IMG/VR virus record: IMGVR_UViG_3300035698_013060
Span: 1-64,000 of that record
Length of the DNA stretch: 64,000 nt
Strand: one strand, 5' to 3'
In this document: piece by piece, positions 34,337 to 58,424 of the stretch
How positions within the stretch are numbered: the stretch's first letter is position 1
Layout: every line of letters begins with the position of its first letter
The notes under the pieces: generated by a model
Told to the model about the DNA's origin: nothing
Seen by the model: the letters and a program-made list of their open reading frames with translations, nothing else
The model's database searches: none
Program-made: the position numbers and the translations under genes

Positions 34337-35962
34337 TCAAGTCTCCAGTATTTTCAACAGTTCATCCTTGGCCGGGAGTCCTAGCCATCGGTGTCCTAGC
34401 TTCAGCATATCTCCTCTAAGGAGATCAGCTGTCAACTTGTATCCTAGTTCGTCACCAGGGTCATTGTCGCTTTTAAACATCAATCTACCAATCTGGTTAG
34501 ACGGGTCTATCATACACGACAGAATGATAGATGGATACAGAGAAGACAAGTCCAAATCACAGACATTCTCGAAGATCGAGTTCAGTAGGTGACCCATGAC
34601 CCTCACCCCGAGGGACGCATTATTTTCAGGGCTCATCACCCACGCTCCTCTGAATTTTCCTCCATGCTTTCTCCCGACGTTTCTGTTGTTACTCATTATG
34701 AGTCCCTGATCAAACATGTGTTTCAGGGCCAGGTTTCTCAAGGACACCGTCTTCCTCCATGCCTTATGCACTCTGGTACGAGTGATCATGGCGATCTGAT
34801 AGATGAGGTCGATGTCTTTGGTCTTCTGTTCGATCTTGTGCAACAGAATCGAGTCGTTCATGTTGTAGAAGACGTATTTCTTGTAATCCGTCCTCGAGAA
34901 TTCTCTCATTGAGCAATCCATGGGATCTTTACCACTGCCGACCTTTTCTTCTTCTGCAATGTCGTCAAGACCGTAACCGTCCTTCTTACCAAGAGTAGCT
35001 CTCAAGTTTGCATACGTAATGAGCTGGTCGATGTAATTCGTCCATCCTGCTACGACAGCATAGTCACCCTTCGTGCTCCAATCCTGGTTCCGTGTATCCT
35101 CATAGTAGTAGGCCTTCTTAAAGGGGAAGTCCTTAGGACACATGATCTCCGAAGGTTCACACCTAAAGAGTTTCTTGATTCTCCCTTCCATATAGCAAAA
35201 ATCATAGCCCTGGTTCCATGCTCCGAGGAAGTCCGGACGAAGCTCTTCGTTAACGGTTCTGAAGAATGACAAGATCAGCTTCCGCTCATCTTCGAAGAAT
35301 GTAATGCGACACTCGTCTAGATCGAAGCGATCAATCGCTTCATCAGCGTTTGCCTCTAGATTCTTCTCAAACTCTTCTACCAGAGGATTATCCTCATTCC
35401 GGAGTAGAAAGACATACAGCGTGTTCAACTTTCCACTGTACAACGAGATAGCGTCAATCGGACATGGAGCGTTCTCTCTGTCAAAAGGATTACCATCCCA
35501 ACTGTCAACCTCAATGTCCCAGTGGGCTTTGTGTAGATTTGGAGCTATATTGATCTCCCCTTGATATCTGTCAATCCACCGGCCGATATAATGATCTTCT
35601 ACGTGGATATCAGTACCATGAAAGAATGGCAGCTTCCGCATGTACTCTTTCATATTCCAGCTCGTCCGGTCACGAATACTACGCTCCCACTCCGTCTCTA
35701 GTCCTGCCAACTCAGCCATGGTCCGACCGACGTCTCCATACGGAACTTTCTCTATTGGTACGACCTCGTCGATGGGGACGAACGTCGCTCCTCTATCTCT
35801 TTCGATATCGTCCATATCCACAAAGAAACTTAAGGTTGGTTTCTTGTCGACATGAAGCTTCTTTTCACCGTCAATACATTCGGTAAGTAGGAGCTTACCA
35901 GTGGAGTTGGAACCACGGCGACTGTTAACGTAAGTTACTGTTGAAAGGTATCTCTCCGGCAT
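34337..35962 (-). CDS. Split family-B DNA polymerase, N-terminal part (3'-5' exonuclease + motif A)
   Basis: ExoI WDIEVD, ExoII AWNQGYDF, ExoIII YNMNDS, FRGAWV, motif A DLSSLYPSII. Confidence 0.92.
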   Translation of the reverse strand: MPERYLSTVTYVNSRRGSNSTGKLLLTECIDGEKKLHVDKKPTLSFFVDMDDIERDRGATFVPIDEVVPIEKVPYGDVGRTMAELAGLETEWERSIRDRTSWNMKEYMRKLPFFHGTDIHVEDHYIGRWIDRYQGEINIAPNLHKAHWDIEVDSWDGNPFDRENAPCPIDAISLYSGKLNTLYVFLLRNEDNPLVEEFEKNLEANADEAIDRFDLDECRITFFEDERKLILSFFRTVNEELRPDFLGAWNQGYDFCYMEGRIKKLFRCEPSEIMCPKDFPFKKAYYYEDTRNQDWSTKGDYAVVAGWTNYIDQLITYANLRATLGKKDGYGLDDIAEEEKVGSGKDPMDCSMREFSRTDYKKYVFYNMNDSILLHKIEQKTKDIDLIYQIAMITRTRVHKAWRKTVSLRNLALKHMFDQGLIMSNNRNVGRKHGGKFRGAWVMSPENNASLGVRVMGHLLNSIFENVCDLDLSSLYPSIILSCMIDPSNQIGRLMFKSDNDPGDELGYKLTADLLRGDMLKLGHRWLGLPAKDELLKILET

Positions 35963-36111: not shown

Positions 36112-36810
36112 ATGTCTGATCAAGAAAAAGACGCTATCTCGCTGGGCAAGTACGTCGACCACTTTACCGCCGAGATGGAGCTCATCATCGCTGAGCTCGA
36201 AAAGCTCCAGAGAGATGCCGACGACATATCCTCTGAGATAACGGAGAAGAAGGCTGCTGCTAAGAAAAATCGCGCTCGGCATAATTCGGGACCGAGTCCG
36301 CTGACATACATGTACAATATGTACGCCAATCTAAACAACGTCAGAGGTAACCGAATTTCATTGATGACGCTTCTTGTGAATATCAAGAGACTGATAGCTG
36401 ACCTGAGCATTAAGGATGTAAAGGTGGAACAGGATGTCTCTAAATTCGCTGGTCTTGCTGCCGAACTCTATGCACGCATATCTCAGGACAGAGACCCCTC
36501 CACAGAACCTGCCACAGATAAAGCAGCTGTGTTAGTAGCTGATGCAATCGAAGGGCTCGATGAAGCTGGAGAAACCGCATACCAAGACTTGACCGAAGAT
36601 GTCGTCGAAATGGAAGGTCAATACGTCTGTACGGATGAAGGCGTCATCCTCAGAGTCGATGATGACTATGAGCTCTTGGAAGAAGTTTCAGGGGCAGACA
36701 TGAATGACTTTAGGATAGCTTTGAATAGAGACAAGTCAGTTCGAAAGGCTACCTGGATTAGCGGAGATCAAGAACTTGAGATCGTTGAGATTGGTGATGA
36801 GGAGGAGTAG
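36112..36810 (+). CDS. Hypothetical protein
   Basis: GGGAG RBS; late promoter at 36057-36068. Confidence 0.8.
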   Translation: MSDQEKDAISLGKYVDHFTAEMELIIAELEKLQRDADDISSEITEKKAAAKKNRARHNSGPSPLTYMYNMYANLNNVRGNRISLMTLLVNIKRLIADLSIKDVKVEQDVSKFAGLAAELYARISQDRDPSTEPATDKAAVLVADAIEGLDEAGETAYQDLTEDVVEMEGQYVCTDEGVILRVDDDYELLEEVSGADMNDFRIALNRDKSVRKATWISGDQELEIVEIGDEEE

Positions 36811-39117: not shown

Positions 39118-39194
39118 ACCCTGGTAGCTCAGCTGGATAGAGCAACGGCCTTCTAAGCCGTAGGTCCCGCGTTCGAGTCGCGGCCGGGGTGCCA
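39118..39194 (+). tRNA. tRNA-Arg(TCT)
   Basis: Full cloverleaf: ACCCTGG/CCGGGGT, anticodon loop CTTCTAA, TTCGAGT T-loop, encoded CCA. Confidence 0.97.
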
Positions 39195-39216
39195 GTAGTC
39201 TAAAAGGAAGTCACAT

Positions 39217-39735
39217 ATGCTGGACCTCGAATTGTTAGCCAGATGGTTTTGGCTACTTCCACTGTCTATACTTCTAGCAATATCGTATGTATCATACATG
39301 CTTAAGAAATGTGAAAAGTGTGAACACGTCGTAACTCTAACTCTAGCTCGAGAGGCCTTTAAAAGGTCCAGGGAGTTTGTCCTCGTGTTCTCTTCAGAAG
39401 GGAGGATTCTCTTTGTCAACAAAGTGTTTCCTCACATGAGTAAGCTTATCGGTATCACGAGTATTAATGGGACATTAGTAGATGAGTGGTTAGCGAGCTC
39501 TTGCATTAAACGACATAACACGATGATATCTGAAGTGTTGAAGGATGGACAAGAGAGGGCGATGTTGATCGAGATGAAGTTCGGTAACTTTCTGATTACT
39601 AGAATATCTAAGTTCTCCTTAGGGAAAGATCGAGAGCTTGTCATCGCCATTGCGCATGACGTGACTGATGAGTTCAAAGATCTAGAGGAACAAGAGAGGG
39701 AGACGATCATGAAAAATGGATGGAGGCTCCCATGA
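39217..39735 (+). CDS. Membrane-anchored PAS-domain protein
   Basis: N-terminal TM; VLVFSSEGRILFVN ... VIAIAHDVTD PAS/PAC motifs; no output domain. Confidence 0.7.
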   Translation: MLDLELLARWFWLLPLSILLAISYVSYMLKKCEKCEHVVTLTLAREAFKRSREFVLVFSSEGRILFVNKVFPHMSKLIGITSINGTLVDEWLASSCIKRHNTMISEVLKDGQERAMLIEMKFGNFLITRISKFSLGKDRELVIAIAHDVTDEFKDLEEQERETIMKNGWRLP

Positions 39736-39944
39736 ATGTAGGAGATAAAGCGATATTCCCTCGCAGGAAAATTTCCTCTGGTGGGAAGACACTGTACGAC
39801 ACCAGATGGACGGTCTCTGAGATTCAGGATGACATATTCACTCTGACAAATCGAAGAGGTCGGACTATCAAGGTTAGAAAGACTGCAATTGGTTTCAGAG
39901 AGCCGACTCCAGCCGAACTGGTCAAGTACCGGAAGAGTTGGTAA
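39732..39944 (+). CDS. Small SH3/KOW-like hypothetical protein
   Basis: MNVGDK start with GGAGG RBS; terminator hairpin 39966-40002. Confidence 0.65.
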   Translation: MNVGDKAIFPRRKISSGGKTLYDTRWTVSEIQDDIFTLTNRRGRTIKVRKTAIGFREPTPAELVKYRKSW

Positions 39945-40029
39945 CAAGTTTGTGTTCGCAACACAGTCAGTCCCCCATCCCCTTAAAGGGATGGGGACTG
40001 ACATTCTGTCCGGACATGAAAGGAAGAAC

Positions 40030-40245
40030 ATGCCGATCTTGAAGAGCAGTTATTCGTGCGTGTCTTGTGGGAACACGATGTACGGTATGAGATGTGGGAT
40101 GAGAGACCCACGACTGCCAGGGATCAGCGTGGTAAAGTGTAATAAGTGTTCAGCAAAGACCTTCATTTGCTTGAGGACTGGAGACAGAATACCCAGACCT
40201 CAGATCATTTCTATGCTCGGATTAGAGCTTTGGGAATCGATCTAA
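40030..40245 (+). CDS. Small Zn-ribbon protein
   Basis: CVSC...CNKC; AAGGA RBS. Confidence 0.6.
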   Translation: MPILKSSYSCVSCGNTMYGMRCGMRDPRLPGISVVKCNKCSAKTFICLRTGDRIPRPQIISMLGLELWESI

Positions 40246-40254
40246 CACATGATT

Positions 40255-40320
40255 GGGCCGCTAGGGGTGGACCGATGATCCGGGGGTGATTCCCCGAGGA
40301 GGTCCACCCCAGGCCGCCAC
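40255..40320 (+). ncRNA. Kink-turn hairpin RNA/leader upstream of tmRNA
   Basis: GGGGTGGACC/GGTCCACCCC stem, 3-nt bulge, tandem GA/GA; begins at late promoter AACACATGATTG (40244-40255). Confidence 0.5.
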
Positions 40321-40328
40321 ACCTTTTC

Positions 40329-40780
40329 GGGGGCGAATATGGTCTCGACTGGGTAGACTAAGGTGATAGCTGCGTTCAGAGGATGGGTCGTTGGCCTCTG
40401 TAAAAACATCGACCTGCAAACACAACTGCCAAAACCACACCGGTTATGCAGTTCCCCGCTCCTCTTGCCCTCGCGGCATAAGGAACTAGTTGACGAGACA
40501 ATGCCCGGCCGAACTCGCCGCCCTAGAGGCACAGAGTTTCGTCACGTCAGCGAAAAGAACATAGGTATCGGGTAAAGAACCCACGGGTCGTGTAGCTAAC
40601 GTACACGTGGACGGTCCTTCGGGACCACTAGCTCGACTCACAATGTCGCTCTTCGGAGCGGTGGAGTGTCTTTCCATGCCTGTAATAAGGTGAGTCGTAT
40701 CGGCACAAACATAGACTATAACGTAGACGCTATTACTAAGTGTATCTAGGACCCGGGTTCGACTCCCGGCGCCTCCACCA
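40329..40780 (+). ncRNA. ssrA: tmRNA (452 nt)
   Basis: 5' GGGGGCG...TCGAC; 3' T-arm CCGGGTTCGACTCCCGG, then CGCCTCC-A-CCA with G3-U wobble; tag ORF 40428-40481 AKTTPVMQFPAPLALAA*. Confidence 0.96.
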
Positions 40781-40788
40781 TTCATCAA

Positions 40789-40814
40789 ATCCCCTATCCA
40801 TTTGGATAGGGGAT
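40789..40814 (+). terminator. Hairpin after tmRNA
   Basis: ATCCCCTATCCA/TGGATAGGGGAT; no U-tract. Confidence 0.6.
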
Positions 40815-40831
40815 CAATACTGAGGAAGAAA

Positions 40832-41194
40832 ATGACTGAACAAATTCTCACTCAAGAGGAAGTTCTGTATGCTCCGGGGACAATGGGAGAATGGATTAAG
40901 TCCCAGCTCATTTCAATGGGCATGTTCTCTCACCATGCTGATGCCATCATGAAGATGGTCGTCGAGGATCCCTCATACCAGAGTGTCATCCAGTGCTTGG
41001 ACAAGAGGAAGGATGGATATCCTGAAATACTTCCGAAAATTGTCCTTCGATCCTTCAGAGCGGCAACCTTGAAGTGGATCGACGCAAACATACCAGAACA
41101 TTTTGCTCGGCCAATGTTTTCGGGAGAGCTCGATGACATTAAGAACAATCCCCCTCAATGGCTAGTCGATCAGATGTCTAAAGAATCCTCTTAG
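40832..41194 (+). CDS. Hypothetical protein
   Basis: MTEQIL start with GAGG RBS; WIDANIPEHFARPMF pattern. Confidence 0.75.
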   Translation: MTEQILTQEEVLYAPGTMGEWIKSQLISMGMFSHHADAIMKMVVEDPSYQSVIQCLDKRKDGYPEILPKIVLRSFRAATLKWIDANIPEHFARPMFSGELDDIKNNPPQWLVDQMSKESS

Positions 41195-41231
41195 GATTTT
41201 CCGTTTAGACGATTCGGGAACTCCATATCAT

Positions 41232-41355
41232 TGAGGCAAATGATCCGATCCATCCCCGACGACGCGCTCGGTGACCGCTCCCACAGGCGGTCTACCGAGG
41301 ACCTTCACTCAGATCATGTCCCCAGGCGTTCCAGGACGCTTGGGGACTTGGTTTG
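41232..41355 (+). ncRNA. Small structured RNA candidate
   Basis: Closing stem 41240-41248/41309-41317, inner hairpin 41267-41299, terminator 41318-41347. Confidence 0.45.
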
Positions 41356-41382
41356 GCTTTGGTTCCATAACAGTATTCATGT

Positions 41383-41458
<76 letters not shown>

Positions 41459-41737: not shown

Positions 41738-41970
41738 ATATAAATCTTCAACTCAGGAGTTTAACCATGGTGAATCAGTGCTCTGATAGCACCGGAAATC
41801 ACATAGTCGTGAAGGGAAGCAGAGTCCGATGTCGTGGTAGAGATTATACGGTCAAGAATATCATTCCTGGAGGTGGTAGGCACGGGACCTGCGCTTTGGA
41901 GTTCGAAGAGGAATTCCATATTAAAGGAATTGAGGTCCCAGATGAGATCTCGATCGATTTGATCCATTGA
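41722..41970 (+). CDS. Small hypothetical protein
   Basis: CSDSTGNHIVVKGSRVRCRG SH3-like pattern; true start may be 41767 (AGGAG RBS). Confidence 0.65.
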   Translation: MDDRVDINLQLRSLTMVNQCSDSTGNHIVVKGSRVRCRGRDYTVKNIIPGGGRHGTCALEFEEEFHIKGIEVPDEISIDLIH

Positions 41971-41991: not shown

Positions 41992-42047
41992 GGGGTTCAC
42001 GTTCGTCCCTCCCTCCTTCCCCCTCTTCCCCAGCGGACGTGAACCCC
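41992..42047 (+). ncRNA. Hairpin with 28-nt C-rich (anti-SD-like) loop, copy 1
   Basis: 14-bp stem; loop TCCCTCCCTCCTTCCCCCTCTTCCCCAG. Confidence 0.55.
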
Positions 42048-42063
42048 TTATTTTCGGAATGAA

Positions 42064-42094
42064 AAACCCCCAGGCCAATGAGGCCTGGGGGTTT
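42064..42094. terminator. Bidirectional terminator
   Basis: AAACCCCCAGGCC/GGCCTGGGGGTTT between convergent units. Confidence 0.75.
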
Positions 42095-42133: not shown

Positions 42134-42559
42134 TCAGGTCTTGTTAGCGCCTGCGCCCTTGGGCAGATCAGACGACTTCTTGTTACCCTCCGAACCGGAA
42201 AGGATTTCACGAGCGGCGGAAGTGGCCTTACTCCGGTACTTGGTCTCGATTTTCTTCCGGAAATTCTCAGCCATCGCCCGGTGCTTCTTCCACTGGACCC
42301 AGTTGGCATCCTTGTTGCGAGAAGCCATTTCCATGGCAGTCCTCTGCACCAACCGACCAATCTTTTGCTTCTTTGTGATCTTGACGCGCTTGATCTCCGT
42401 AGAGAAGCTAGCACGCTTCCGTTCGGTCAGGATCTGTTCGTCAGAGATCTCTTTGCCAGATTCATCCAAAAGGCCAAGGTCTTGTGCCTCCTCGACGATA
42501 ATGGCGATAAGGGCGTCTTCCTGAACTTGCTCTTCTGCTTCGTTTCCAAAAATGCTCAT
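42134..42559 (-). CDS. Putative internal head protein (acidic propeptide + basic domain), paralog B
   Basis: MSIF start, LDE/LTE sites, basic C-half similar to 42623-43099. Confidence 0.75.
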   Translation of the reverse strand: MSIFGNEAEEQVQEDALIAIIVEEAQDLGLLDESGKEISDEQILTERKRASFSTEIKRVKITKKQKIGRLVQRTAMEMASRNKDANWVQWKKHRAMAENFRKKIETKYRSKATSAAREILSGSEGNKKSSDLPKGAGANKT

Positions 42560-43322: not shown

Positions 43323-45302
43323 ATGAAGACTGGAGCTTTTCTAGACGAATACTCGGCGGAAGCCACTGCCATGCTTGAGACAGCAGCCGGAAGAAAACTC
43401 ACTGAGAGTGAGATTAATACTCTAAGTAAAACAATCCAAGGGGTAGAAGACACACAGATTGAACTCTCTAACACATATACTGAAACAGAGAGGACTTGTT
43501 CCTTACTATCGGTCCTAGACCGACTTCGAGAAGTGAAACCAATCATCACCGGCAATGGAACCCTCTTTAATAGGGAAGGGGCTGGAGGACACAACGTCGC
43601 TGGTGGTTTTGTGAAGAGTCTTTTAGATACCAGGAAGGCTTGTAAGAAACGGATGTTCGAGGTTCAAGACAAGGCTAAAGGAAAAAAGGGAAATGACAAG
43701 AAGGTTTTGGACCAGCAGAAAGAAGTGTTGGACATGCGCCAGAAGGTCTTTAAAGTCTTAGTAAATGCTTACTACGGCTCGATAGGAATGCCCGCCTTCA
43801 TATTCTATGATCCGAATTCTGCTCCAGCTGTGACTGGAACTGGTATGAACGTAGTCACTAGTCTAGTACAGTCGTTCGAACAGTTCCTTGATGATAACTG
43901 GGCTTTCGAATGTTGGGGTGACGTCTTCGAGTTCGTACAAGCCTCTCTCGACAAAGATTCCTCTTATGAGATCGAATTGTCAACTGACATTAATGTCTCT
44001 GATATCCATGAGAGACTGACGAGAAAGCTTCCAGAAGGATTACATCCTTCAGAGGGTGAAGAGATCTTGTCTCAGATGTCTGCAAGACTTCAGACCCTTC
44101 TTGAATCCTTGGATGATGATCAACTCGCAAGGTTGTATTACAGGAACAATCTTTATGCGTTTCTGGTAGAGAGTGACGTCTCTGATCTCCTTGTAGAAAT
44201 TCTGGGATATGATATCCCATCCGGTAATCCTGGAGAAGTTGATGATCCAACGCTCAAGAAAAATTTAGATACTCTGTGGGCGGTGGTGAATGATTACGTA
44301 GTTCTACTAACGTTCCATCAGGACAGGATGGACTTCTGTGAGCACTCTGAGAAAAGGTCTGTCCTTGTAGTGGACACTGATTCGACATTCCTGTTGATGG
44401 ACACGTTCGTCAAGTGGGTAGTTGACACCTACGATATTGGAGAACTCGATCCTAACAGAAGAATCAGCCTATGTAACATAGTGGTTTTCATGATGGCTGG
44501 ATACTCTGATATTATCCTAGAGGACTATGCTCGTAGGACCAATATCGAAGCATCAGAACATCTGGATTTGAAGAATGAATTCATCTTCTCCAGAATCATG
44601 CTAACTCCTAACAAAAAGTCATATGCTGGAAGCATCATGTCTCGAGAAGGTAAACTACTTAGTCCTCCAAAATTCGAGATCACCGGTCTAAAGATCAAGA
44701 CAATTAATGTGAACAAGAAAACGAGGGAGTACTTCAAGCGCGTATTGAAGGATAAGATAGTTGAGTGTAAAGAGATCGATATCCAAGATCTCTTAGGGGA
44801 ATTTGTAGCTTATGAGGTTATGGTCGCTGAAAGCATCGAGAACGGCGAGCTAGTGTTCGCTCAACCGACGAAATACAGCGGCTTCAGCTTTTATAAGGAA
44901 CCATACAGACAGGCAGTTGTACGGGGAACAGTCGTGTGGAACGATATTTACCCAGAGACTCCAATCCAAGCACTTGACAACGTCAGAATGCTTAAGTGTG
45001 CTGGAATCTCCGAAGGGGATTTCGACGCTATTGTTACTAACTTGAAAAAAGAGGATGCAAAGATAGCCGCCAGGGTCCGTGACCTGGTATTTGAGAATGA
45101 AAAGACTGCTCACCACGGATTCAGCAGAGTTTGTTTACCAAGGTCTGTCAAGGAAATCCCATCCTGGGTCAAGCCGTTTGTGGACGTTGAAATGATCGTC
45201 CATGACAACGTGAGGAACGCGCTCATCCTCCTGGAATCTGTCGGCATTGTAGTGCTCGACGCCAGGAATCGTTCGCGGTACTCCAACATCGTCCGGTTTT
45301 GA
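43323..45302 (+). CDS. Split family-B DNA polymerase, C-terminal part (motifs B and C, thumb)
   Basis: LLDTRKACKK, QKVFKVLVNAYYG, VTGTG, VVDTDS, LKNEF, KKSYA, ITGL. Confidence 0.92.
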   Translation: MKTGAFLDEYSAEATAMLETAAGRKLTESEINTLSKTIQGVEDTQIELSNTYTETERTCSLLSVLDRLREVKPIITGNGTLFNREGAGGHNVAGGFVKSLLDTRKACKKRMFEVQDKAKGKKGNDKKVLDQQKEVLDMRQKVFKVLVNAYYGSIGMPAFIFYDPNSAPAVTGTGMNVVTSLVQSFEQFLDDNWAFECWGDVFEFVQASLDKDSSYEIELSTDINVSDIHERLTRKLPEGLHPSEGEEILSQMSARLQTLLESLDDDQLARLYYRNNLYAFLVESDVSDLLVEILGYDIPSGNPGEVDDPTLKKNLDTLWAVVNDYVVLLTFHQDRMDFCEHSEKRSVLVVDTDSTFLLMDTFVKWVVDTYDIGELDPNRRISLCNIVVFMMAGYSDIILEDYARRTNIEASEHLDLKNEFIFSRIMLTPNKKSYAGSIMSREGKLLSPPKFEITGLKIKTINVNKKTREYFKRVLKDKIVECKEIDIQDLLGEFVAYEVMVAESIENGELVFAQPTKYSGFSFYKEPYRQAVVRGTVVWNDIYPETPIQALDNVRMLKCAGISEGDFDAIVTNLKKEDAKIAARVRDLVFENEKTAHHGFSRVCLPRSVKEIPSWVKPFVDVEMIVHDNVRNALILLESVGIVVLDARNRSRYSNIVRF

Positions 45303-46950: not shown

Positions 46951-47012
46951 GTCCGAACAGGATATTGACTACACCTCACTCAAATTCCAAGAGCCGGAGA
47001 GAGTCGAGACGC

Positions 47013-48563
47013 ATGAAGACGGACATATTCCAAATAGACACGTTCGTGGAGGTCAACAGCCTGAAGGCCGTTACCAACCCGATCTACCTCAATCCCGACA
47101 GGACACCCACGTCCAACGGGATCTTTTCGTTTGAGATCTTCGGTACTCCGGGGACTAGGGATAGGAAAGAAAGGTTCGGGTATATCGACCTCAATGCACA
47201 CGTCATACACCCGTTCCTGTACAAACATCTCGTTCAGATGGACCGGAAAATCCGGGCCGTGGCCGAAGGGATGAACTTGTTCAAGGTTGATAAGGCTGGA
47301 GATCTTGCCAAAGCAGAAGAAGGTGATAAGGATGCTGGTACAGGATTGGAGTGGCTATACTCTGTCTTTAAGACCATCAAGTGGAAGCCTTCCGGGACTA
47401 AGTCTCGTGATACGAAGATCTCAATGTTTCGCCAACTGAAGGTGGATGAGATCTTCGTGACCAAGTGGCCGATAATTCCATGTCACTACAGAGATCTGAA
47501 CTTTGCCAAATTAGATACCGGACGTATCGGTATTGGTGAAGTGAATGAGTTCTATGTTAGGGTCCTTGGAGCATCTGAAGCAGTCAAGAGGAACCCTCCT
47601 GGTCTTGGTTTGGTTGGTCACTCAGCGTCGTACAGGATGCAGACTGTCTTAGTTGAGCTCTATGATCATCTGATGTCCCGTATGACCTTTGGTAAGCGGG
47701 GCTACATTCGTCGGTTCCTTATGGGTAAGAACCTAGACTATACGGCTCGGGTAGTCATCACAACCAGTAAGATGTCCGAGGCTGATAGGTACACTGATAC
47801 TGAAGTGCCTCTTTCTCACATGGGCGTTCCTTTGCACATCTGCTGTGTTGCCTTTCAACCATTCGTGGTAAAGGCAGTACAGGAGATGCTTGGGTCCATC
47901 CTAGCTGGAAAGAGGCGTATCATCATGGGGCAGAAGTCTGTCGAGGGTATAGATCTTCTCTCCGAGAATATCTCGGATGATGGAGTCGAACAGATGATCT
48001 CCATGTTCGCCAGATCCCAGGAAGAGCGGTTCAGTCCGATCCTCTTGGAAGATGCTGAAGGGAACAAGACGGAACTCAAGTTGTTTGAACAGTTTCTGGG
48101 CCGTAGCTTTACGGTGTGCGATCTTCTTTTTCTTGCCTGCCGAGAGGCTATCAAAGGCAAGTACATGTACATCACTCGTTATCCAGTAACGTCACATCAG
48201 TCAACCAACGTTGTCAAACCAGTCATTGTCACTACCGAGAAAACTACTACGATCGACTTCACCCCAGGTGGAACTGCCGAAGGACGTAGATCTATTCTTG
48301 GAAAGATTGACAATTACCCGGATATCAATTACGGTCACCTGTGGCGTGAAGCTGCAGTGATGGACAATACTATGACTGGAATCACTGGCGCAGACTTCGA
48401 CGGAGATCAAATGAGTCTCGTCGGGATGTTCACCCAGGAAGCCAACGCTGAAGCTGAAAAGATCATGAAGAGTAAGATGAGTCTCGTGACGGCTGACGGA
48501 CGTCCGTCCAGAAACGTTAGTAATGAGGCTGTGCTTTCGTTGTACATGATGACAAAGGATTGA
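47013..48563 (+). CDS. RNA polymerase beta-prime N-terminal/catalytic fragment
   Basis: GIFSFEIFG, RFGYIDL, IIPCHYRD, GKRGYIRRFLMGKNLDYTARVVI, TRYP, catalytic GADFDGD; start moved to MKTDIF. Confidence 0.95.
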   Translation: MKTDIFQIDTFVEVNSLKAVTNPIYLNPDRTPTSNGIFSFEIFGTPGTRDRKERFGYIDLNAHVIHPFLYKHLVQMDRKIRAVAEGMNLFKVDKAGDLAKAEEGDKDAGTGLEWLYSVFKTIKWKPSGTKSRDTKISMFRQLKVDEIFVTKWPIIPCHYRDLNFAKLDTGRIGIGEVNEFYVRVLGASEAVKRNPPGLGLVGHSASYRMQTVLVELYDHLMSRMTFGKRGYIRRFLMGKNLDYTARVVITTSKMSEADRYTDTEVPLSHMGVPLHICCVAFQPFVVKAVQEMLGSILAGKRRIIMGQKSVEGIDLLSENISDDGVEQMISMFARSQEERFSPILLEDAEGNKTELKLFEQFLGRSFTVCDLLFLACREAIKGKYMYITRYPVTSHQSTNVVKPVIVTTEKTTTIDFTPGGTAEGRRSILGKIDNYPDINYGHLWREAAVMDNTMTGITGADFDGDQMSLVGMFTQEANAEAEKIMKSKMSLVTADGRPSRNVSNEAVLSLYMMTKD

Positions 48564-54820: not shown

Positions 54821-54954
54821 CGGAAAGGGACCGGTCAGGAGCCGGAAAGGGCCTTCGGGCCCTCCTTTCTTCTATGATCCAACGTATGTGTAGAAGTGTC
54901 ATATACATATTATGGGACTATACTGAGTTAGTCTCTAGCTCTAAACCACAATTT

Positions 54955-55004
54955 GGCGAGGACCCTTTCTCCCTCCCTCCACCATTCCCTAGAGGGTCCT
55001 CGCC
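54955..55004 (+). ncRNA. Hairpin with C-rich (anti-SD-like) loop, copy 2
   Basis: 12-14-bp stem GGCGAGGACCCT/AGGGTCCTCGCC; loop contains TCCCTCCCTCC. Confidence 0.55.
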
Positions 55005-55031
55005 TCCCATTCCAACAAGGAGATTTGAAAG

Positions 55032-55502
55032 ATGAAGATTTGTATGGTTCTAGCAATGGTCTTCGCCGTCTCATGTACAGCGCAGGACAACACAGTAGCA
55101 CGTGTGATCTTCGCTGAAGCCGCCAATGCTGATCACTTGGAGAAGAAACTCGTGATGAGTGTGATCCTGAACCGGGTAGGACATATAGGTTTTGGTCGCA
55201 TTGAGTCGACACGAGGTGTAGTCCTCCAGTCGAAGGCCTTCTCATGTGTCAACGGGAAGGGTAGTACCCTTTGGACTATCTCAGGTAACCCGTCGAAGAT
55301 CGATGGGTTAAATCGAGATACCTGGAAAGAGTGTTTAGATGTAGCTAAGATGACAGTCCCGCTCAGGACTGATATTGTATACTATCATGATCACTCGATC
55401 AAAAAACCATCCAGTTGGAACAACGCATACTGGAACGCCATCGAAGTGGTAAGGACGAAGAAATTCGTCTTTTACCGTGTCGAAGAACAAAAGCATCAAT
55501 GA
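55032..55502 (+). CDS. Cell wall hydrolase, SleB/Hydrolase_2 family, with signal peptide
   Basis: VARVIFAEA (catalytic Glu), VMSVILNRV, AFSCVN, YYH...PSSW, FVFY; N-terminal hydrophobic signal ending VSC. Confidence 0.88.
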   Translation: MKICMVLAMVFAVSCTAQDNTVARVIFAEAANADHLEKKLVMSVILNRVGHIGFGRIESTRGVVLQSKAFSCVNGKGSTLWTISGNPSKIDGLNRDTWKECLDVAKMTVPLRTDIVYYHDHSIKKPSSWNNAYWNAIEVVRTKKFVFYRVEEQKHQ

Positions 55503-55598
55503 TGATCCTCCGCCTGGTAGGAGCCCCACCCGGGGCTCCTGCTTTTTCGTTTTCATCCAACAAAAAATAGACAAATTAGTACAACAGGAGGAACTGTC

Positions 55599-58424
55599 GT
55601 GTACATATCTTATTTAAGACTCGTTAACTTTACAGGAGTCTTCTCGGGGACCGGTCGTAGTGACATCGAGATTGAATTTCCGGACCCAAAGTCAATGTCG
55701 TCTAGGGTAATCTTGTTCATGGGAGCCAATGGCTCAGGCAAGTCAACTACTATGTCTCACCTACATCCCTTTGCTGGGAGCTTCGATGGTCGTGAAGACA
55801 CTATGGTTAGGACCAATGAAGACGGTCTTAAACAGATCCAACTGATCGACGGTGATACTGTATACGACATTGAACACCATTATATACGTTCCGGTAAGAA
55901 GCCGAAGACTAAGAGCTTCATCCAGATTTCTCAGGTTGGTGACGAGAAATCGACTGAACTGAACGAGAATGGTGGAGTTGGTACCTTCAAGGATGTTTTA
56001 GTCGAACGCCTCGGATTGACGGAAGAATTTTTCAAGGTCGGTAGACTGGCTTCAACGACCTCCAACTTCGTGGAGTTGTCCGCAGCACAGAGGAAAGACT
56101 TCATTACGTCTCATCTTCCCAGAGTAGAGCCGTACTTGGAAGCTTTCGGGCATGTTAGGAAGAAGTGCTCGACTAGTGAAAAAACTATGAAGTATCTCGC
56201 CTCAGAGATCTCACGGTACGACGACAGAGAGCAAGTTAACACTGAGATGAACGACGCTAAAAGAGAACTGAAGCGTCGGGATAAAGCTCTGCGAATTCGA
56301 CAAGGTGACGTCTCTGTAACTCAGAGTAAGATTGATACTCTGGTTGAAAAGATCGGTGATGGTACGGAAACCAAAGCCGAGCTCGAGACTGAGCTTCAAG
56401 AATCTTTAGAGTCTTTGGAGGAAGAGCTGGAAACTGTTGTGGAAACGACTGGCGTAGATTACGAAGATGTAGAGACGGTTCAAACTTCGTCGAAAACAAC
56501 CGTAGCTAGGTTGGAACAGGACTTTGATACACAGGATTCACGAATGAGTGAACTGCGTAACGAATTGATCAAGATCGAGAAAGGTTTGGCTGTCAAGGAG
56601 CGCAGGCTTGCTTCTGTCGGAGAACGAGGAGTTGATATCAAGAAACTCCAGAAGGTAGCCAAGGACGAAAAGGTTGAGAAAAAGGCCTCTACTAAGAAGG
56701 CTCAATCTCTTCTGAAAAACTCGACTATCAAAAGGTTTCTTTCACTCGCTGACCATATTCCTGAGTCTCGTTACAGGGGCGAAGCTAGGATGGGTTTAAT
56801 TGAAGCCTCCAGACTCGTCGCTGAGATCTTTCAGTTCCATTCTTCTGTCGAAGCTGACGAAGATGACAACTTCTTTGAGAGTATCACTGAAGAGATCATT
56901 GATCCCAGTTGTAGAGAAGCTACGCTTACTGCAAAGCATGCAGCTGAAGGACTCAGAAAAGACTACATCAAGGCTAAAGAAGACTTGGAGGAACTGGAAC
57001 GTGCAGCCAAGGCTGCTGATGAACTCAATCTCAGACCAGAGGATTGCTCCATTGACTCATGTCATTTCCTCCAGGATGCTGTAGAAGGAAGTAAGAAAGC
57101 CAAGATGATTCCAAAGGCCAAGAGGAAACTGAAGGATATCAAAGAGAAAGGTTTGGAGCAGAAAGAAGCAGCTGAATACTATTCTGCTGTAATGAACGCA
57201 GCCGGGTATGTAAGACAGTTAGCAGAGTTATTAGCTCAAGGCGAAGCCTTTGAAGGTGTTATCCTTCAGAGTAAGAACAAGAAGAACAATCTTGTACCGT
57301 TCTCTCGAGCCATTTTCTCAGGGATGGATCCGTTTGATGTTCCTTCTGTCGCTTCGTACGTCGGTGAAACCGGTGAACTTCATTTCAGAAGTGCTGCTGA
57401 GTCATGTCAGGTTATCTTTGACTATCTGGAATACTTGGAAGACATCCAGAGACATAACGTGAATGCAACAGCTGCTGAAGAGAAGATTGCAACTGTTGAA
57501 GGAAGCGTGGAGTTGGTAACCGGATTGAAGACTGAGATAACCGAATCCAAGAATGATGTTACTAAAAGGAAGACTGCTATCTCTAAGAAGCTCAAAAAGC
57601 TAGTTGAGACTGAAAGACGTCGCAACGAAGCTAGAGAAGTCTGTAGAGGAGCTGATAGAGTAGCTATTCTTGTGAAGAAGTACTCTAAGGCTAAAGAAGA
57701 GCTGACTGAGGTATCGAAGTCTCTTGGTAAGGTTCGGAAGCAGATAAAGCAACTCTCTGATTTCAGAGAGAAGTTAACAGAACAAACTGAGAGTATGGAG
57801 ACTGATGAAAAGTCCAGGGATGCTGCCGCTGAGAAAACTAGACTCTTAGAGGTCAAGATCTCCAAACTGGACGAGTACCAAACTCGATACGATGAGTTCC
57901 AGGCCAGCTACGTTAAACAGGTTGCAGTCAGAGATGCCTGTGATCCTAAGAAGGGTCTCCCACTTGCATTCATGAGAGAATTCATGGCCTCTACTGAAGT
58001 GACAGCAAATACACTCTTCGACATGGCTTTTCGAGGCCGTTTCAGGGTCGGATTTGAAGTCAGTGAAAAGGAGTTCAAGGTCCCTGTTCTAAAGGATGAC
58101 GGTGACATTCTACCGGACGTCAGTTATGCCAGCGACGGAGAGCGAGCTTTGGTCAAGACCATCGTTTCACTTGCTTTACTCAGTCGATACGTCAATGTAT
58201 TCCCGATTCTCGCTATGGATGAGGTAGATGCTACCTTAGACGAAGAGCACAGAGGGAATTTCGCACAGATATTAGACAACCAGGTTGAGGAGCTTGACCT
58301 ATCACAGGTCTTCGCCATCAGCCACAACGAAAACTTCCGTGATCCTAGCGTTTCTGTTGTCCTATTTCCAGGACATACGCTCGGTGAGGGAGAGACAAAT
58401 CCGGTGTTGATGGACTTCTCATAA
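55599..58424 (+). CDS. SbcC/Rad50-like SMC ATPase
   Basis: Walker A GANGSGKST, long coiled coils, CSIDSC hook-like motif, ASDGE signature, Walker B AMDEVD, ISHNE. Confidence 0.93.
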   Translation: MYISYLRLVNFTGVFSGTGRSDIEIEFPDPKSMSSRVILFMGANGSGKSTTMSHLHPFAGSFDGREDTMVRTNEDGLKQIQLIDGDTVYDIEHHYIRSGKKPKTKSFIQISQVGDEKSTELNENGGVGTFKDVLVERLGLTEEFFKVGRLASTTSNFVELSAAQRKDFITSHLPRVEPYLEAFGHVRKKCSTSEKTMKYLASEISRYDDREQVNTEMNDAKRELKRRDKALRIRQGDVSVTQSKIDTLVEKIGDGTETKAELETELQESLESLEEELETVVETTGVDYEDVETVQTSSKTTVARLEQDFDTQDSRMSELRNELIKIEKGLAVKERRLASVGERGVDIKKLQKVAKDEKVEKKASTKKAQSLLKNSTIKRFLSLADHIPESRYRGEARMGLIEASRLVAEIFQFHSSVEADEDDNFFESITEEIIDPSCREATLTAKHAAEGLRKDYIKAKEDLEELERAAKAADELNLRPEDCSIDSCHFLQDAVEGSKKAKMIPKAKRKLKDIKEKGLEQKEAAEYYSAVMNAAGYVRQLAELLAQGEAFEGVILQSKNKKNNLVPFSRAIFSGMDPFDVPSVASYVGETGELHFRSAAESCQVIFDYLEYLEDIQRHNVNATAAEEKIATVEGSVELVTGLKTEITESKNDVTKRKTAISKKLKKLVETERRRNEAREVCRGADRVAILVKKYSKAKEELTEVSKSLGKVRKQIKQLSDFREKLTEQTESMETDEKSRDAAAEKTRLLEVKISKLDEYQTRYDEFQASYVKQVAVRDACDPKKGLPLAFMREFMASTEVTANTLFDMAFRGRFRVGFEVSEKEFKVPVLKDDGDILPDVSYASDGERALVKTIVSLALLSRYVNVFPILAMDEVDATLDEEHRGNFAQILDNQVEELDLSQVFAISHNENFRDPSVSVVLFPGHTLGEGETNPVLMDFS

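What the first reader, a model, noticed from the sequence alone, without database searches (positions are those of the whole stretch)
41992..42047. Two hairpins with unrelated stems but the same C-rich anti-Shine-Dalgarno-like loop (copy 1; copy 2 at 54955-55004)
Seen: both have ~14-bp stems of different sequence (GGGGTTCACGTTCG vs GGCGAGGACCCTTT) enclosing sequences that start TCCCTCCCTCC and end TTCCC[C/T]AG. Conserved loop with swapped stem points to a functional single-stranded motif. Copy 1 contains CCTCCTT, the exact complement of AAGGAGG; it follows a late-promoter-like AACAATCAATCA (41970) and precedes a terminator. Established: C-rich loop sRNAs (RNAIII, RsaE, cuckoo RNAs) repress translation by pairing with SD sequences. 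Inference: phage sRNAs that broadly sequester host ribosome-binding sites. Alternatives: the opposite strand has GGA repeats (CsrA sponge) and four G-tracts (G-quadruplex or origin signal).
Basis: partly seen in the sequence, partly recalled or inferred. Interest (0 to 1): 0.75.

Follow-up and report, generated by a model that had tools for sequence, protein, structure and literature searches.

The report
Two phage hairpins displaying C-rich loops
A 241-kb salt-lake jumbo phage has exactly two very stable RNA hairpins that display a long, G-free, C-rich loop; they are real and not chance, they resemble the ribosome-binding-site-pairing loops of known regulatory RNAs and similar hairpins in unrelated phages, but what they do is untested.

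Summary
At 41992-42047 and 54955-55004 (+ strand) are hairpins with unrelated stems of 15 and 14 bp (about -26 kcal/mol each). Their loops are 26 and 22 nt, G-free and 54-59% C. Both loops start with TCCCTCCCTCC and end with TTCCCYAG. These are the only such hairpins in the 241-kb genome.

The shared 11-mer is only modest evidence, because the loops are low-complexity (P about 0.04 given their composition). The composition of the loops on such stems is the robust oddity.

All three wobble pairs are G-U on the + strand, which is the locally transcribed strand, so these are RNA elements.
- **Copy 1** ends the tRNA-tmRNA-small-ORF unit. It carries a U-tract and is followed by a canonical terminator.
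- **Copy 2** lies in the leader of a secreted cell-wall hydrolase gene, 43 nt after a phage-specific promoter motif. Other leaders from this promoter class also carry hairpins, but with small loops.

No Rfam family matches. No RNA data, close relatives or strain variants exist. Unrelated phage contigs do hold hairpins with near-identical loops on different, covarying stems.

My best reading (about 0.35) is a C-rich loop that pairs with G-rich, Shine-Dalgarno-type RNA.

The parts
41992..42006 (+). copy 1, 5' arm of the stem (GGGGTTCACGTTCGT)
   Evidence: 15 pairs with 42033-42047, including U12-G and U15-G wobble pairs
42007..42032 (+). copy 1, 26-nt G-free C-rich loop (CCCTCCCTCCTTCCCCCTCTTCCCCA); CCTCCTT at 42012-42018
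   Evidence: entirely unpaired in both MFE and centroid structures
42033..42047 (+). copy 1, 3' arm of the stem
42048..42054 (+). U-rich tail (TTATTTT) directly after the copy 1 stem; a terminator-like 3' end
   Evidence: read directly
42067..42091 (.). canonical bidirectional intrinsic terminator (10-bp GC stem, 5-nt loop, A-tract before, T-tract after). It also serves the minus-strand gene 42134-42559
41767..41970 (+). small ORF (67 aa, SD AGGAG) whose stop codon is 21 nt before copy 1; no family hit
39118..41458 (+). RNA gene cluster upstream of copy 1 on the same strand: tRNA-Arg(TCT) 39118-39194, tmRNA 40329-40780, tRNA-Lys(CTT) 41383-41458
54906..54912 (+). phage-specific promoter-like motif CATATTA (consensus nACnYATATTA), 43 nt upstream of copy 2
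   Evidence: 41 genome occurrences, 27 of them intergenic, mostly 30-165 nt upstream of start codons; this site scores 13.6 bits
54955..54968 (+). copy 2, 5' arm of the stem (GGCGAGGACCCTTT)
   Evidence: 14 pairs, one U-G wobble
54969..54990 (+). copy 2, 22-nt G-free C-rich loop (CTCCCTCCCTCCACCATTCCCT)
54991..55004 (+). copy 2, 3' arm of the stem
55017..55023 (+). Shine-Dalgarno AAGGAGA of the downstream gene, 12 nt after the hairpin and unpaired in the predicted fold
55032..55502 (+). gene served by the leader that holds copy 2: SleB-type cell-wall hydrolase with an N-terminal signal-like segment; its own terminator is at 55516-55543
   Evidence: (Pfam Hydrolase_2, 37.6 bits)

Best explanation
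Both elements are RNA hairpins on phage sense transcripts. Each has a very stable 14-15-bp stem that holds open a 22-26-nt loop. The loop has no G and almost no A, so it cannot fold on itself, and it presents three or four CCUCC/UCCC units.

The stems look like this phage's ordinary transcript-end and leader hairpins; the loop is the special part. I take the loop to be a recognition module that pairs with G-rich single-stranded RNA of the Shine-Dalgarno type (GGAG, GGGA, AAGGAGG). That is how the C-rich loops of RsaE/RoxS, RNAIII, 6C and the betaproteobacterial toxic sRNAs work.

Copy 1 is the 3'-terminal hairpin, with a U-tract, of the tRNA-tmRNA-small-ORF unit. It could persist as a 3'-end-derived small RNA that acts in trans. 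Copy 2 carries the same module inside the leader of a cell-wall hydrolase mRNA.

Shown: the structure, the strand, the context and the uniqueness in the genome. Inferred: expression, pairing and any effect on translation.
For: - Strong folds with fully unpaired loops on the + strand.
- All three wobble pairs are G-U on the + strand, and the minus-strand fold of copy 1 is no better than shuffles.
- Both sites lie on the locally transcribed strand.
- These are the only two such hairpins in 241 kb, and their composition is far from chance.
- Copy 1 contains a perfect 7-nt anti-SD, CCTCCTT.
- SD motifs (AAGGAGA, AGGAGG) are the main enriched words upstream of the phage's genes, so SD-led initiation operates in this host.
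- The loops pair somewhat better with start regions than with internal coding windows: -12.1 against -9.5 kcal/mol for copy 1's loop, and -10.7 against -8.7 kcal/mol for copy 2's.
- Other leaders from the same promoter class carry strong hairpins with loops of only 3-8 nt, so the big C-rich loop is an added feature.
- Unrelated phage contigs hold near-identical loops (UCUCCUCCCUCCCUC...) on different, covarying stems, often followed by a U-tract. In a sample of viral contigs, 3.5% of such tracts are enclosed by stems of 10 bp or more, against 0.35% at random positions.
Against: - There is no expression data, because no RNA run was listed.
- There are no relatives or strain variants to test conservation or covariation.
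- No Rfam family matches.
- No specific target has long complementarity. The hydrolase and small-ORF start regions rank 195-216 and 137-212 of 258 as partners.
- The phage's own genes use the same SDs, so a general anti-SD RNA would not discriminate host from phage.
- Copy 2 is not an independent sRNA.
- The shared 11-mer is only modestly significant given the low complexity (P 0.04).
Confidence: 0.35

Rival explanations
1. The hairpins are purely structural. Copy 1 is a (weakened) terminator or 3'-end protector, and copy 2 is a leader stabiliser like the other leader hairpins. The loops are just non-pairing pyrimidine spacers, possibly grown by slippage of a TCCC unit, with no sequence-specific partner.
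For: - Leader hairpins are generic in this phage.
- Copy 1 has a U-tract and sits where a terminator is expected.
- The loop motif is low-complexity, and (TCCC)n runs arise easily.
- No specific target was found.
Against: - It does not explain why a 22-26-nt loop is kept at all, when every other terminator and leader hairpin here has 3-8 nt.
- It does not explain why both large loops are G-free and C-rich with the same start and end.
- It does not explain why near-identical loops are kept on covarying stems in other phage lineages.
Confidence: 0.25
2. The loop is a protein-binding platform rather than a base-pairing seed. Candidates are ribosomal protein S1 (a standby site or translation enhancer upstream of the hydrolase SD), a cold-shock, KH-type or phage-encoded RNA-binding protein, or Rho.
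For: - An unstructured pyrimidine-rich tract 27-62 nt upstream of a free SD (copy 2) is where S1 or standby sites act (established knowledge).
- Analogous hairpins in L261, L308 and L330 also lie 40-70 nt upstream of SD plus ATG.
- C-rich, G-poor RNA is the known preference of Rho.
Against: - Copy 1 has no downstream gene on its strand.
- Loops of 22-26 nt are short for a rut site (about 60-80 nt).
- The phage encodes its own RNA polymerase, on which Rho may not act.
- No RNA-binding protein gene was recognised next to either copy.
Confidence: 0.2
3. The elements act at DNA level. The G-rich minus strand forms a G-quadruplex (or the C-rich strand an i-motif) within an extruded cruciform, marking a replication, recombination or nuclease site.
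For: - Only four quadruplex-type motifs exist in the whole genome, and two are these loops.
- Copy 1 lies 1.3 kb from the DNA polymerase gene, and copy 2 lies 0.6 kb from an SbcC-like gene.
Against: - The stems contain T-G/A-C mismatches that weaken a cruciform but are good G-U pairs in + strand RNA.
- In copy 2 the fourth G-run lies in the stem.
- There are no flanking origin features.
- The analogous elements in other phages carry U-tracts typical of RNA 3' ends.
Confidence: 0.08
4. Chance resemblance of two unrelated hairpins.
For: The loops are low-complexity. Given their composition, an 11-mer match has P 0.04.
Against: The joint occurrence of long stems, long loops, zero G and more than 54% C in 2 of 16 hairpins is about 1e-6 by composition. 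Both copies are on the sense strand.
Confidence: 0.03

Closest known systems
C-rich-loop riboregulators that pair with Shine-Dalgarno regions (RsaE/RoxS, S. aureus RNAIII hairpins 7, 13 and 14, prophage-encoded SprX, actinobacterial 6C; PMC6486639, PMC4152353, PMC4005690)
   Same: Unpaired UCCC/CCUCC motifs are displayed in hairpin loops. As in RNAIII hairpin 14, one copy is itself the terminator hairpin. At least one known example (SprX) is phage-borne.
   Different: The loops here are two to three times longer (22-26 nt against about 6-12) and sit on much longer stems. There is no Rfam match. Copy 2 is embedded in an mRNA leader. Expression and targets are unknown.
Betaproteobacteria toxic small RNA (Rfam RF02278; Kimelman et al. 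2012, recalled from memory; cited in PMC4603805)
   Same: Short terminator-ended RNAs with pyrimidine-rich anti-SD-like loops, often on mobile DNA; they are toxic, presumably by titrating ribosome-binding sites.
   Different: RF02278 did not match either copy at E up to 10. It also did not match the look-alike phage elements at E up to 1. The host and phage lineage are different.
Unnamed phage RNA family found here (Burkholderiales-type prophage contigs: L011, L013, L015, L217-L236, L237/L350/L353, L261/L308)
   Same: A stem closes a 22-31-nt G-poor loop with the core UCUCCUCCCUCCCUC and often ...CUUCCCCAG. The stems differ between lineages (GCCUGGG, GCCGGGGG, GCCGCUGCCG, GCGCUGCCUG) while the loop is kept. 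A U-rich tract follows, and several copies lie 40-100 nt upstream of an SD plus ATG, like copy 2.
   Different: That family has an outer helix and a second small GNRA hairpin, both absent here. Its hosts have high GC. A covariance model of its loop hairpin ranks copy 2 first in the window but only at 18.2 bits (E 0.18), and copy 1 at 9.9 bits (E 6.8). This is resemblance, not demonstrated membership.
Intrinsic (Rho-independent) terminators
   Same: Copy 1 has a GC-rich stem followed at once by UUAUUUU, at the end of a transcription unit.
   Different: The loop is 26 nt instead of 3-8. Copy 2 has no U-tract. A canonical terminator follows copy 1 only 19 nt later.

Membership tests
Known C-rich-loop sRNA families in Rfam (RsaE, 6C, RNAIII, RF02278 toxic sRNA, alpha-proteobacterial anti-SD sRNAs) | Match to the family covariance model | tested here: not met
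   No hit at gathering threshold in the window. No hit from these families at E up to 10 around either copy; the best match at copy 1 is Pxr at 23.9 bits against a gathering score of 80.
C-rich-loop anti-SD riboregulators (as a functional kind) | Unpaired CCUCC/UCCC motifs presented in a hairpin loop | tested here: met
   The loops are fully unpaired in MFE and centroid structures. Copy 1 holds CCUCCUU, and both hold UCCCUCCCUCC.
C-rich-loop anti-SD riboregulators (as a functional kind) | Own transcription unit (promoter and terminator) or a processed stable small RNA | tested here: inconclusive
   Copy 1 has a U-tract and a downstream terminator, but the only nearby promoter-type word (41917) scores 5.3 bits, like non-promoter sites. 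Copy 2 has a promoter motif upstream but no terminator and continues into a gene.
C-rich-loop anti-SD riboregulators (as a functional kind) | Expressed as RNA | not testable with these tools
   No RNA run was listed for this sequence; only DNA runs hold it.
C-rich-loop anti-SD riboregulators (as a functional kind) | Loop-dependent pairing with the ribosome-binding sites of targets | tested here: inconclusive
   Pairing with start regions is only generic: -12.1 against -9.5 kcal/mol for internal windows. No extended target was found, and the neighbouring genes' start regions are below-average partners. The host genome is unknown.
Intrinsic terminator | GC-rich stem, loop of 3-8 nt, U-tract directly after the stem | tested here: inconclusive
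   Copy 1 meets the stem and U-tract criteria but its loop is 26 nt. Copy 2 has no U-tract (UCCCAUUCC).
Phage C-rich-loop RNA family found here (alignment A3, model R1) | Significant score against the covariance model of the loop hairpin; presence of the outer helix and the second GNRA hairpin | tested here: not met
   Copy 2 scores 18.2 bits (E 0.18) and is the top hit of the window; copy 1 scores 9.9 bits (E 6.8). Neither copy has the outer helix or the second hairpin.
CsrA/RsmA-titrating RNA (minus strand) | Several GGA motifs in the loops of short hairpins on a transcribed RNA; match to CsrB/RsmX/Y/Z models | tested here: not met
   There is no Rfam match. The minus strand is antisense to the local genes at copy 2, and at copy 1 it lies beyond the minus-strand gene's terminator. 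The minus-strand fold of copy 1 has z = -0.29.
G-quadruplex-forming DNA/RNA (minus strand) | Four runs of three or more G separated by short loops | tested here: met
   Both loops match on the minus strand; they are two of only four such motifs in the genome. Whether the quadruplex forms or has a function cannot be tested here.
Rho utilisation site | About 60-80 nt of unstructured C-rich, G-poor RNA | tested here: not met
   Only 22-26 nt are unpaired, and the flanks are a stable helix.

The most novel reading that the evidence does not exclude
The long G-free (UCCC)n loop on a strong stem is a recurrent, so far unnamed, phage RNA module. It appears here in a jumbo phage that encodes its own RNA polymerase, and in several unrelated temperate-phage lineages. 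It would act as a mimic of the 16S rRNA 3' tail. In that role it could be a decoy that captures Shine-Dalgarno sequences. Alternatively it could capture factors that recognise or cleave the anti-SD, such as anti-SD-cutting toxins or initiation proteins. Either way it would give phages a general handle on translation initiation or a counter-defence.
Probability: 0.12. Interest if true: 0.8.

Novelty: new variant of a known kind. Interest (0 to 1): 0.5.

Why it matters
Regulatory RNAs of jumbo phages are almost unexplored. If the loops do pair with ribosome-binding sites, this would be a phage-encoded translation regulator with an unusually large multivalent seed. One copy is placed next to the phage's tRNA/tmRNA module and the other in front of a cell-wall hydrolase gene.

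The same loop on different stems in unrelated phages suggests a broader, unnamed RNA class. That class could be defined and tested with simple reporter, toeprint and binding assays.

If the loops turn out to be inert spacers, the result still documents this phage's promoter motif and its habit of starting transcripts with hairpins.

Tried and rejected
1. **Comparative genomics of the phage.**
   - The neighbouring hydrolase has no homologue but itself.
   - The DNA polymerase's nearest relatives are 36-41% identical, AT-rich, lack the hairpins and lack the whole 36.8-42.1 kb module.
   - Other salt-lake DNA runs hold the phage at 3-5x with no differences, and one contig spans copy 1 unchanged.
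   - So no covariation test is possible.
2. **Expression.** No RNA run was listed.
3. **Loop motif in bacterial genomes.** There were 81 scattered hits without enclosing stems, which is uninformative.
4. **Loop motif in metagenomes.** More than 120 hits were (TCCC)n runs ending in YAG, without stems. They come from a few lake metagenomes at 55-60% GC and look like eukaryotic intron polypyrimidine tracts, so they are irrelevant.
It is not repeated and is unlike the phage motif.
6. **Further copies in the genome.** The candidates at 154792-154823 (+) and 211828-211855 (-) are short; the second is antisense to a gene and the first lies in a stretch where my rough gene call placed no gene. Neither is a member.
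7. **Cis anti-SD pseudoknot with the hydrolase SD.** Only 5 bp (GGAGA/UCUCC) can pair, and this start region is a below-average partner.
8. **Coding explanations.**
   - A + strand ORF (54874-55035) reads through copy 2, with the loop encoding SLPPPFP, and ends in ATGA on the hydrolase start. Its start codons lie upstream of the predicted promoter and have no SD, and copy 1 has no counterpart.
   - The minus-strand ORFs across both hairpins overlap a terminator or real genes.
9. **An RNA-binding protein next door.** The 67-aa ORF gave no family and no confident look-alike.
11. **Annotated phage records.** Nothing there resembles the window beyond a tRNA or the look-alike family.

Full report
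**What the window is.** The window is the first 64 kb of a 241,176-bp virus record with direct terminal repeats. The record is held by salt-lake metagenome runs. Several features mark it as a bacteriophage of the jumbo class that carries its own multisubunit RNA polymerase:
- genes are preceded by Shine-Dalgarno motifs;
- it encodes tRNA-Arg, a tmRNA and tRNA-Lys;
- it has a split family-B DNA polymerase;
- it has a protein with the RNA polymerase Rpb1 domain 2 (46965-48563, 29 bits).

**Checking the observation.**
- On the + strand, copy 1 (41992-47) folds into 15 pairs around a 26-nt loop (-26.1 kcal/mol, z -3.6).
- On the + strand, copy 2 (54955-55004) folds into 14 pairs around a 22-nt loop (-26.0 kcal/mol, z -6.2). 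Both loops are fully unpaired.
- The stems are unrelated in sequence.
- Both loops begin with TCCCTCCCTCC, an 11-mer found nowhere else in the genome, and end with TTCCCYAG.
- Copy 1 holds CCTCCTT.

A whole-genome scan found only 16 hairpins with a perfect stem of 10 bp or more and a loop of 12-45 nt. These two are the only ones with long C-rich loops. Relaxing the stem to 7 bp added nothing comparable.

The 11-mer is weaker evidence than it looks. For loops made almost only of C and T, a shared 11-mer has P about 0.04. The composition is the strong signal: only 71 of 482,310 22-nt windows have at least 12 C and no G. Two such windows sitting in the loops of 2 of 16 long hairpins is not chance.

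**Strand and level of action.**
- The three non-Watson-Crick pairs in the stems are all G-U when the + strand is read. They would be A-C mismatches on the other strand.
- The minus-strand fold of copy 1 is no better than shuffled sequence (z -0.29).
- At both sites the + strand is the transcribed strand.

I therefore treat both copies as RNA elements whose C-rich strand is the functional one. The loops are nevertheless two of only four quadruplex-type motifs in the genome.

**Context of copy 1.**
- It lies 21 nt after the stop of a 67-aa ORF (41767-41970). That ORF is the last gene of a + strand block containing tRNA-Arg, tmRNA and tRNA-Lys.
- In the nearest relatives a 232-aa + strand gene (like the window's 36112-36810) directly abuts the two small minus-strand genes before the DNA polymerase. 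The 36.8-42.1 kb block therefore looks like an insertion.
- The stem is followed at once by TTATTTT. A canonical bidirectional terminator (42067-42091) follows 19 nt later and also ends the converging minus-strand gene.
- The 'late-promoter-like' AACAATCAATCA is not repeated in the genome.

**Context of copy 2, and the phage's promoter motif.** K-mer enrichment in upstream regions revealed a phage-specific motif, nACnYATATTA.
- YATATTA occurs 41 times, about half the number I estimated from base composition.
- 27 of these are in the roughly 10% of the genome that is non-coding, mostly 30-165 nt before start codons.
- A review of jumbo-phage polymerases describes such bioinformatically detectable AT-rich 10-nt motifs, centred at -10, as early promoters read by the virion polymerase (PMC7598289).
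- One instance (54906-54912, 13.6 bits) lies 43 nt upstream of copy 2.
- The only instance near copy 1 (41917) scores 5.3 bits, like non-functional in-gene sites.

Copy 2 is therefore in the roughly 110-nt leader of gene 55032-55502. That gene is a SleB-type cell-wall hydrolase with a signal-like N-terminus and its own terminator. The hairpin ends 12 nt before the SD, AAGGAGA, which stays unpaired in the predicted fold.

Folding the predicted leaders of 25 promoters of this class showed that most begin with a strong hairpin, but with a loop of 3-8 nt. Strong stems at transcript starts and ends are thus ordinary in this phage. The large C-rich loop is what is added at these two places.

**What could not be learned.**
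- No Rfam family matches either copy.
- No RNA run was listed.
- The hydrolase has no homologue, and the polymerase's nearest relatives are 36-41% identical and lack the elements.
- Other lake samples hold the phage without a single difference.

Conservation and covariation within the lineage therefore cannot be tested.

**Related sequences elsewhere.** Searching the loop motif gave three kinds of result.
- In bacterial genomes it gave scattered hits without enclosing stems.
- In metagenomes it gave (TCCC)n runs ending in YAG that look like intron polypyrimidine tracts of a lake eukaryote. The motif alone is therefore not diagnostic.
- In viral contigs every non-self hit had the tract as a hairpin loop.

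Following this up gave a family of at least 15 elements in Burkholderiales-type prophage contigs.
- It has an outer helix.
- A 7-bp helix closes a 26-31-nt loop with the conserved core UCUCCUCCCUCCCUC.
- A second small hairpin covaries, and a U-tract follows.
- It is absent from Rfam.

A looser search sampled 114 sites. In that sample, 3.5% of the tracts are enclosed by stems of 10 bp or more. The comparison figures are 0.35% at random positions, 0 of 95 sites in bacterial genomes and 1 of 912 in the metagenome hits. The new cases keep the loop on quite different stems (GCCGGGGG; GCCGCUGCCG against GCGCUGCCUG; a 16-bp stem in L330). Several lie 40-70 nt upstream of an SD plus ATG, like copy 2. 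The downstream genes share no family.

A covariance model of the family's loop hairpin ranks copy 2 first in the window, but at 18.2 bits (E 0.18), and copy 1 at 9.9 bits. The resemblance is real, but membership is not shown. 'Same loop, swapped stem' is nonetheless a recurring pattern in phage DNA, which argues that the loop is functional.

**Mechanism.** The best-supported reading is a displayed single strand that pairs with G-rich RNA of the Shine-Dalgarno type, as in RsaE/RoxS, RNAIII, 6C and the toxic sRNAs of Betaproteobacteria.
- In favour: the unpaired CCUCC/UCCC units, the perfect anti-SD heptamer in copy 1, the terminator-hairpin position of copy 1 (as in RNAIII hairpin 14), SD-led initiation in this system, and slightly better predicted pairing with start regions than with coding windows.
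- Against: no specific target, below-average pairing with the two adjacent start regions, the phage's own dependence on the same SDs, and no expression data.

I give this reading 0.35. The rivals are:
- inert spacers on ordinary structural hairpins (0.25), which does not explain the size, composition and recurrence of the loops;
- a protein platform such as an S1 standby site (0.2), which fits copy 2 and the leader-borne look-alikes but not copy 1;
- a DNA-level quadruplex or cruciform (0.08);
- chance (0.03).

**Verdict.** The promoter claim and the 'broad sequestration' claim are not supported. The function remains to be tested. I class it as a new variant of a known kind (C-rich-loop riboregulators). 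There is a modest chance that it belongs to a wider unnamed phage RNA class.

Noticed in passing
window 54906-54912 and about 40 other sites genome-wide (e.g. 2250, 3100, 52853, 60924): A phage-specific promoter-like motif, nACnYATATTA. It is about half as frequent as I estimated from base composition, and 27 of 41 copies are intergenic, mostly 30-165 nt upstream of start codons. Some copies have CCGTAAATA about 15 nt upstream. It is probably the early-promoter consensus of the phage's own RNA polymerase.
   Followed up: partly
genome-wide, downstream of the promoter motif (e.g. window 2250, 3100, 53499; genome 128593, 138606, 234818, 236544): Most predicted leaders from this promoter class start with a strong GC-rich hairpin with a 3-8-nt loop. 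Several have a U-tract, so they look like terminators placed just after a promoter. They could be 5' stabilisers or attenuators.
   Followed up: partly
window 39118-39194, 40329-40780, 41383-41458: tRNA-Arg(TCT), a one-piece tmRNA (Rfam 102 bits; missed by ARAGORN) and tRNA-Lys(CTT) sit in a roughly 5-kb + strand block (36.8-42.1 kb). The nearest relatives have no such block between the 232-aa gene and the genes upstream of the DNA polymerase.
   Followed up: partly
window 46965-48563: A 532-aa protein carries the RNA polymerase Rpb1 domain 2 (29 bits). It is a beta-prime-like fragment, as in phiKZ/AR9-type jumbo phages that encode multisubunit RNA polymerases.
   Followed up: partly
window 34337-35962 (-) and 43323-45302 (+): The family-B DNA polymerase is split into separate exonuclease and polymerase genes on opposite strands, about 7 kb apart. 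The relatives have the same split, but there the two genes are close together.
   Followed up: no
L011:6487-6574, L013, L015, L217-L236, L237, L350, L353, L261, L308 (viral contigs): An unnamed structured RNA family in Burkholderiales-type prophages. It has an outer helix, a helix closing a conserved C-rich loop, a covarying GNRA hairpin and a U-tract, and it is not in Rfam. In L234, and by shared protein families probably L223, it lies about 100 nt upstream of a diversity-generating retroelement cassette (lectin-fold target, bAvd, reverse transcriptase). In others it lies about 1 kb downstream of an S24 repressor gene. A Burkholderiales-2 RNA match lies 1-2 kb away in L011 and L237.
   Followed up: partly
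L097-L216 (metagenome contigs, mostly Ga01050xx, Ga0209390, Ga0209491, Ga01604xx): There are hundreds of (TCCC)n runs ending in TTCCCYAG, usually followed by G, in contigs of 55-60% GC from a few lake metagenomes. They look like intron polypyrimidine tracts with 3' splice sites of an abundant eukaryote (an alga?) and are unrelated to the phage.
   Followed up: partly
window 54874-55035 (+): A 53-codon ORF reads through copy 2, with the loop encoding SLPPPFP. Its stop overlaps the hydrolase start (ATGA). Its start codons lack an SD and lie upstream of the predicted promoter, so it is probably not translated.
   Followed up: partly
window 55599-58424: An SbcC-like (SMC/RecN-type) ATPase gene lies directly downstream of the hydrolase. 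Together with the split polymerase, this looks like a replication and recombination block.
   Followed up: no
window 39217-39735: A 172-aa protein with a PAS fold (23.8 bits, just above the cut-off) sits between the tRNA-Arg and the tmRNA, which is unusual for a phage.
   Followed up: no
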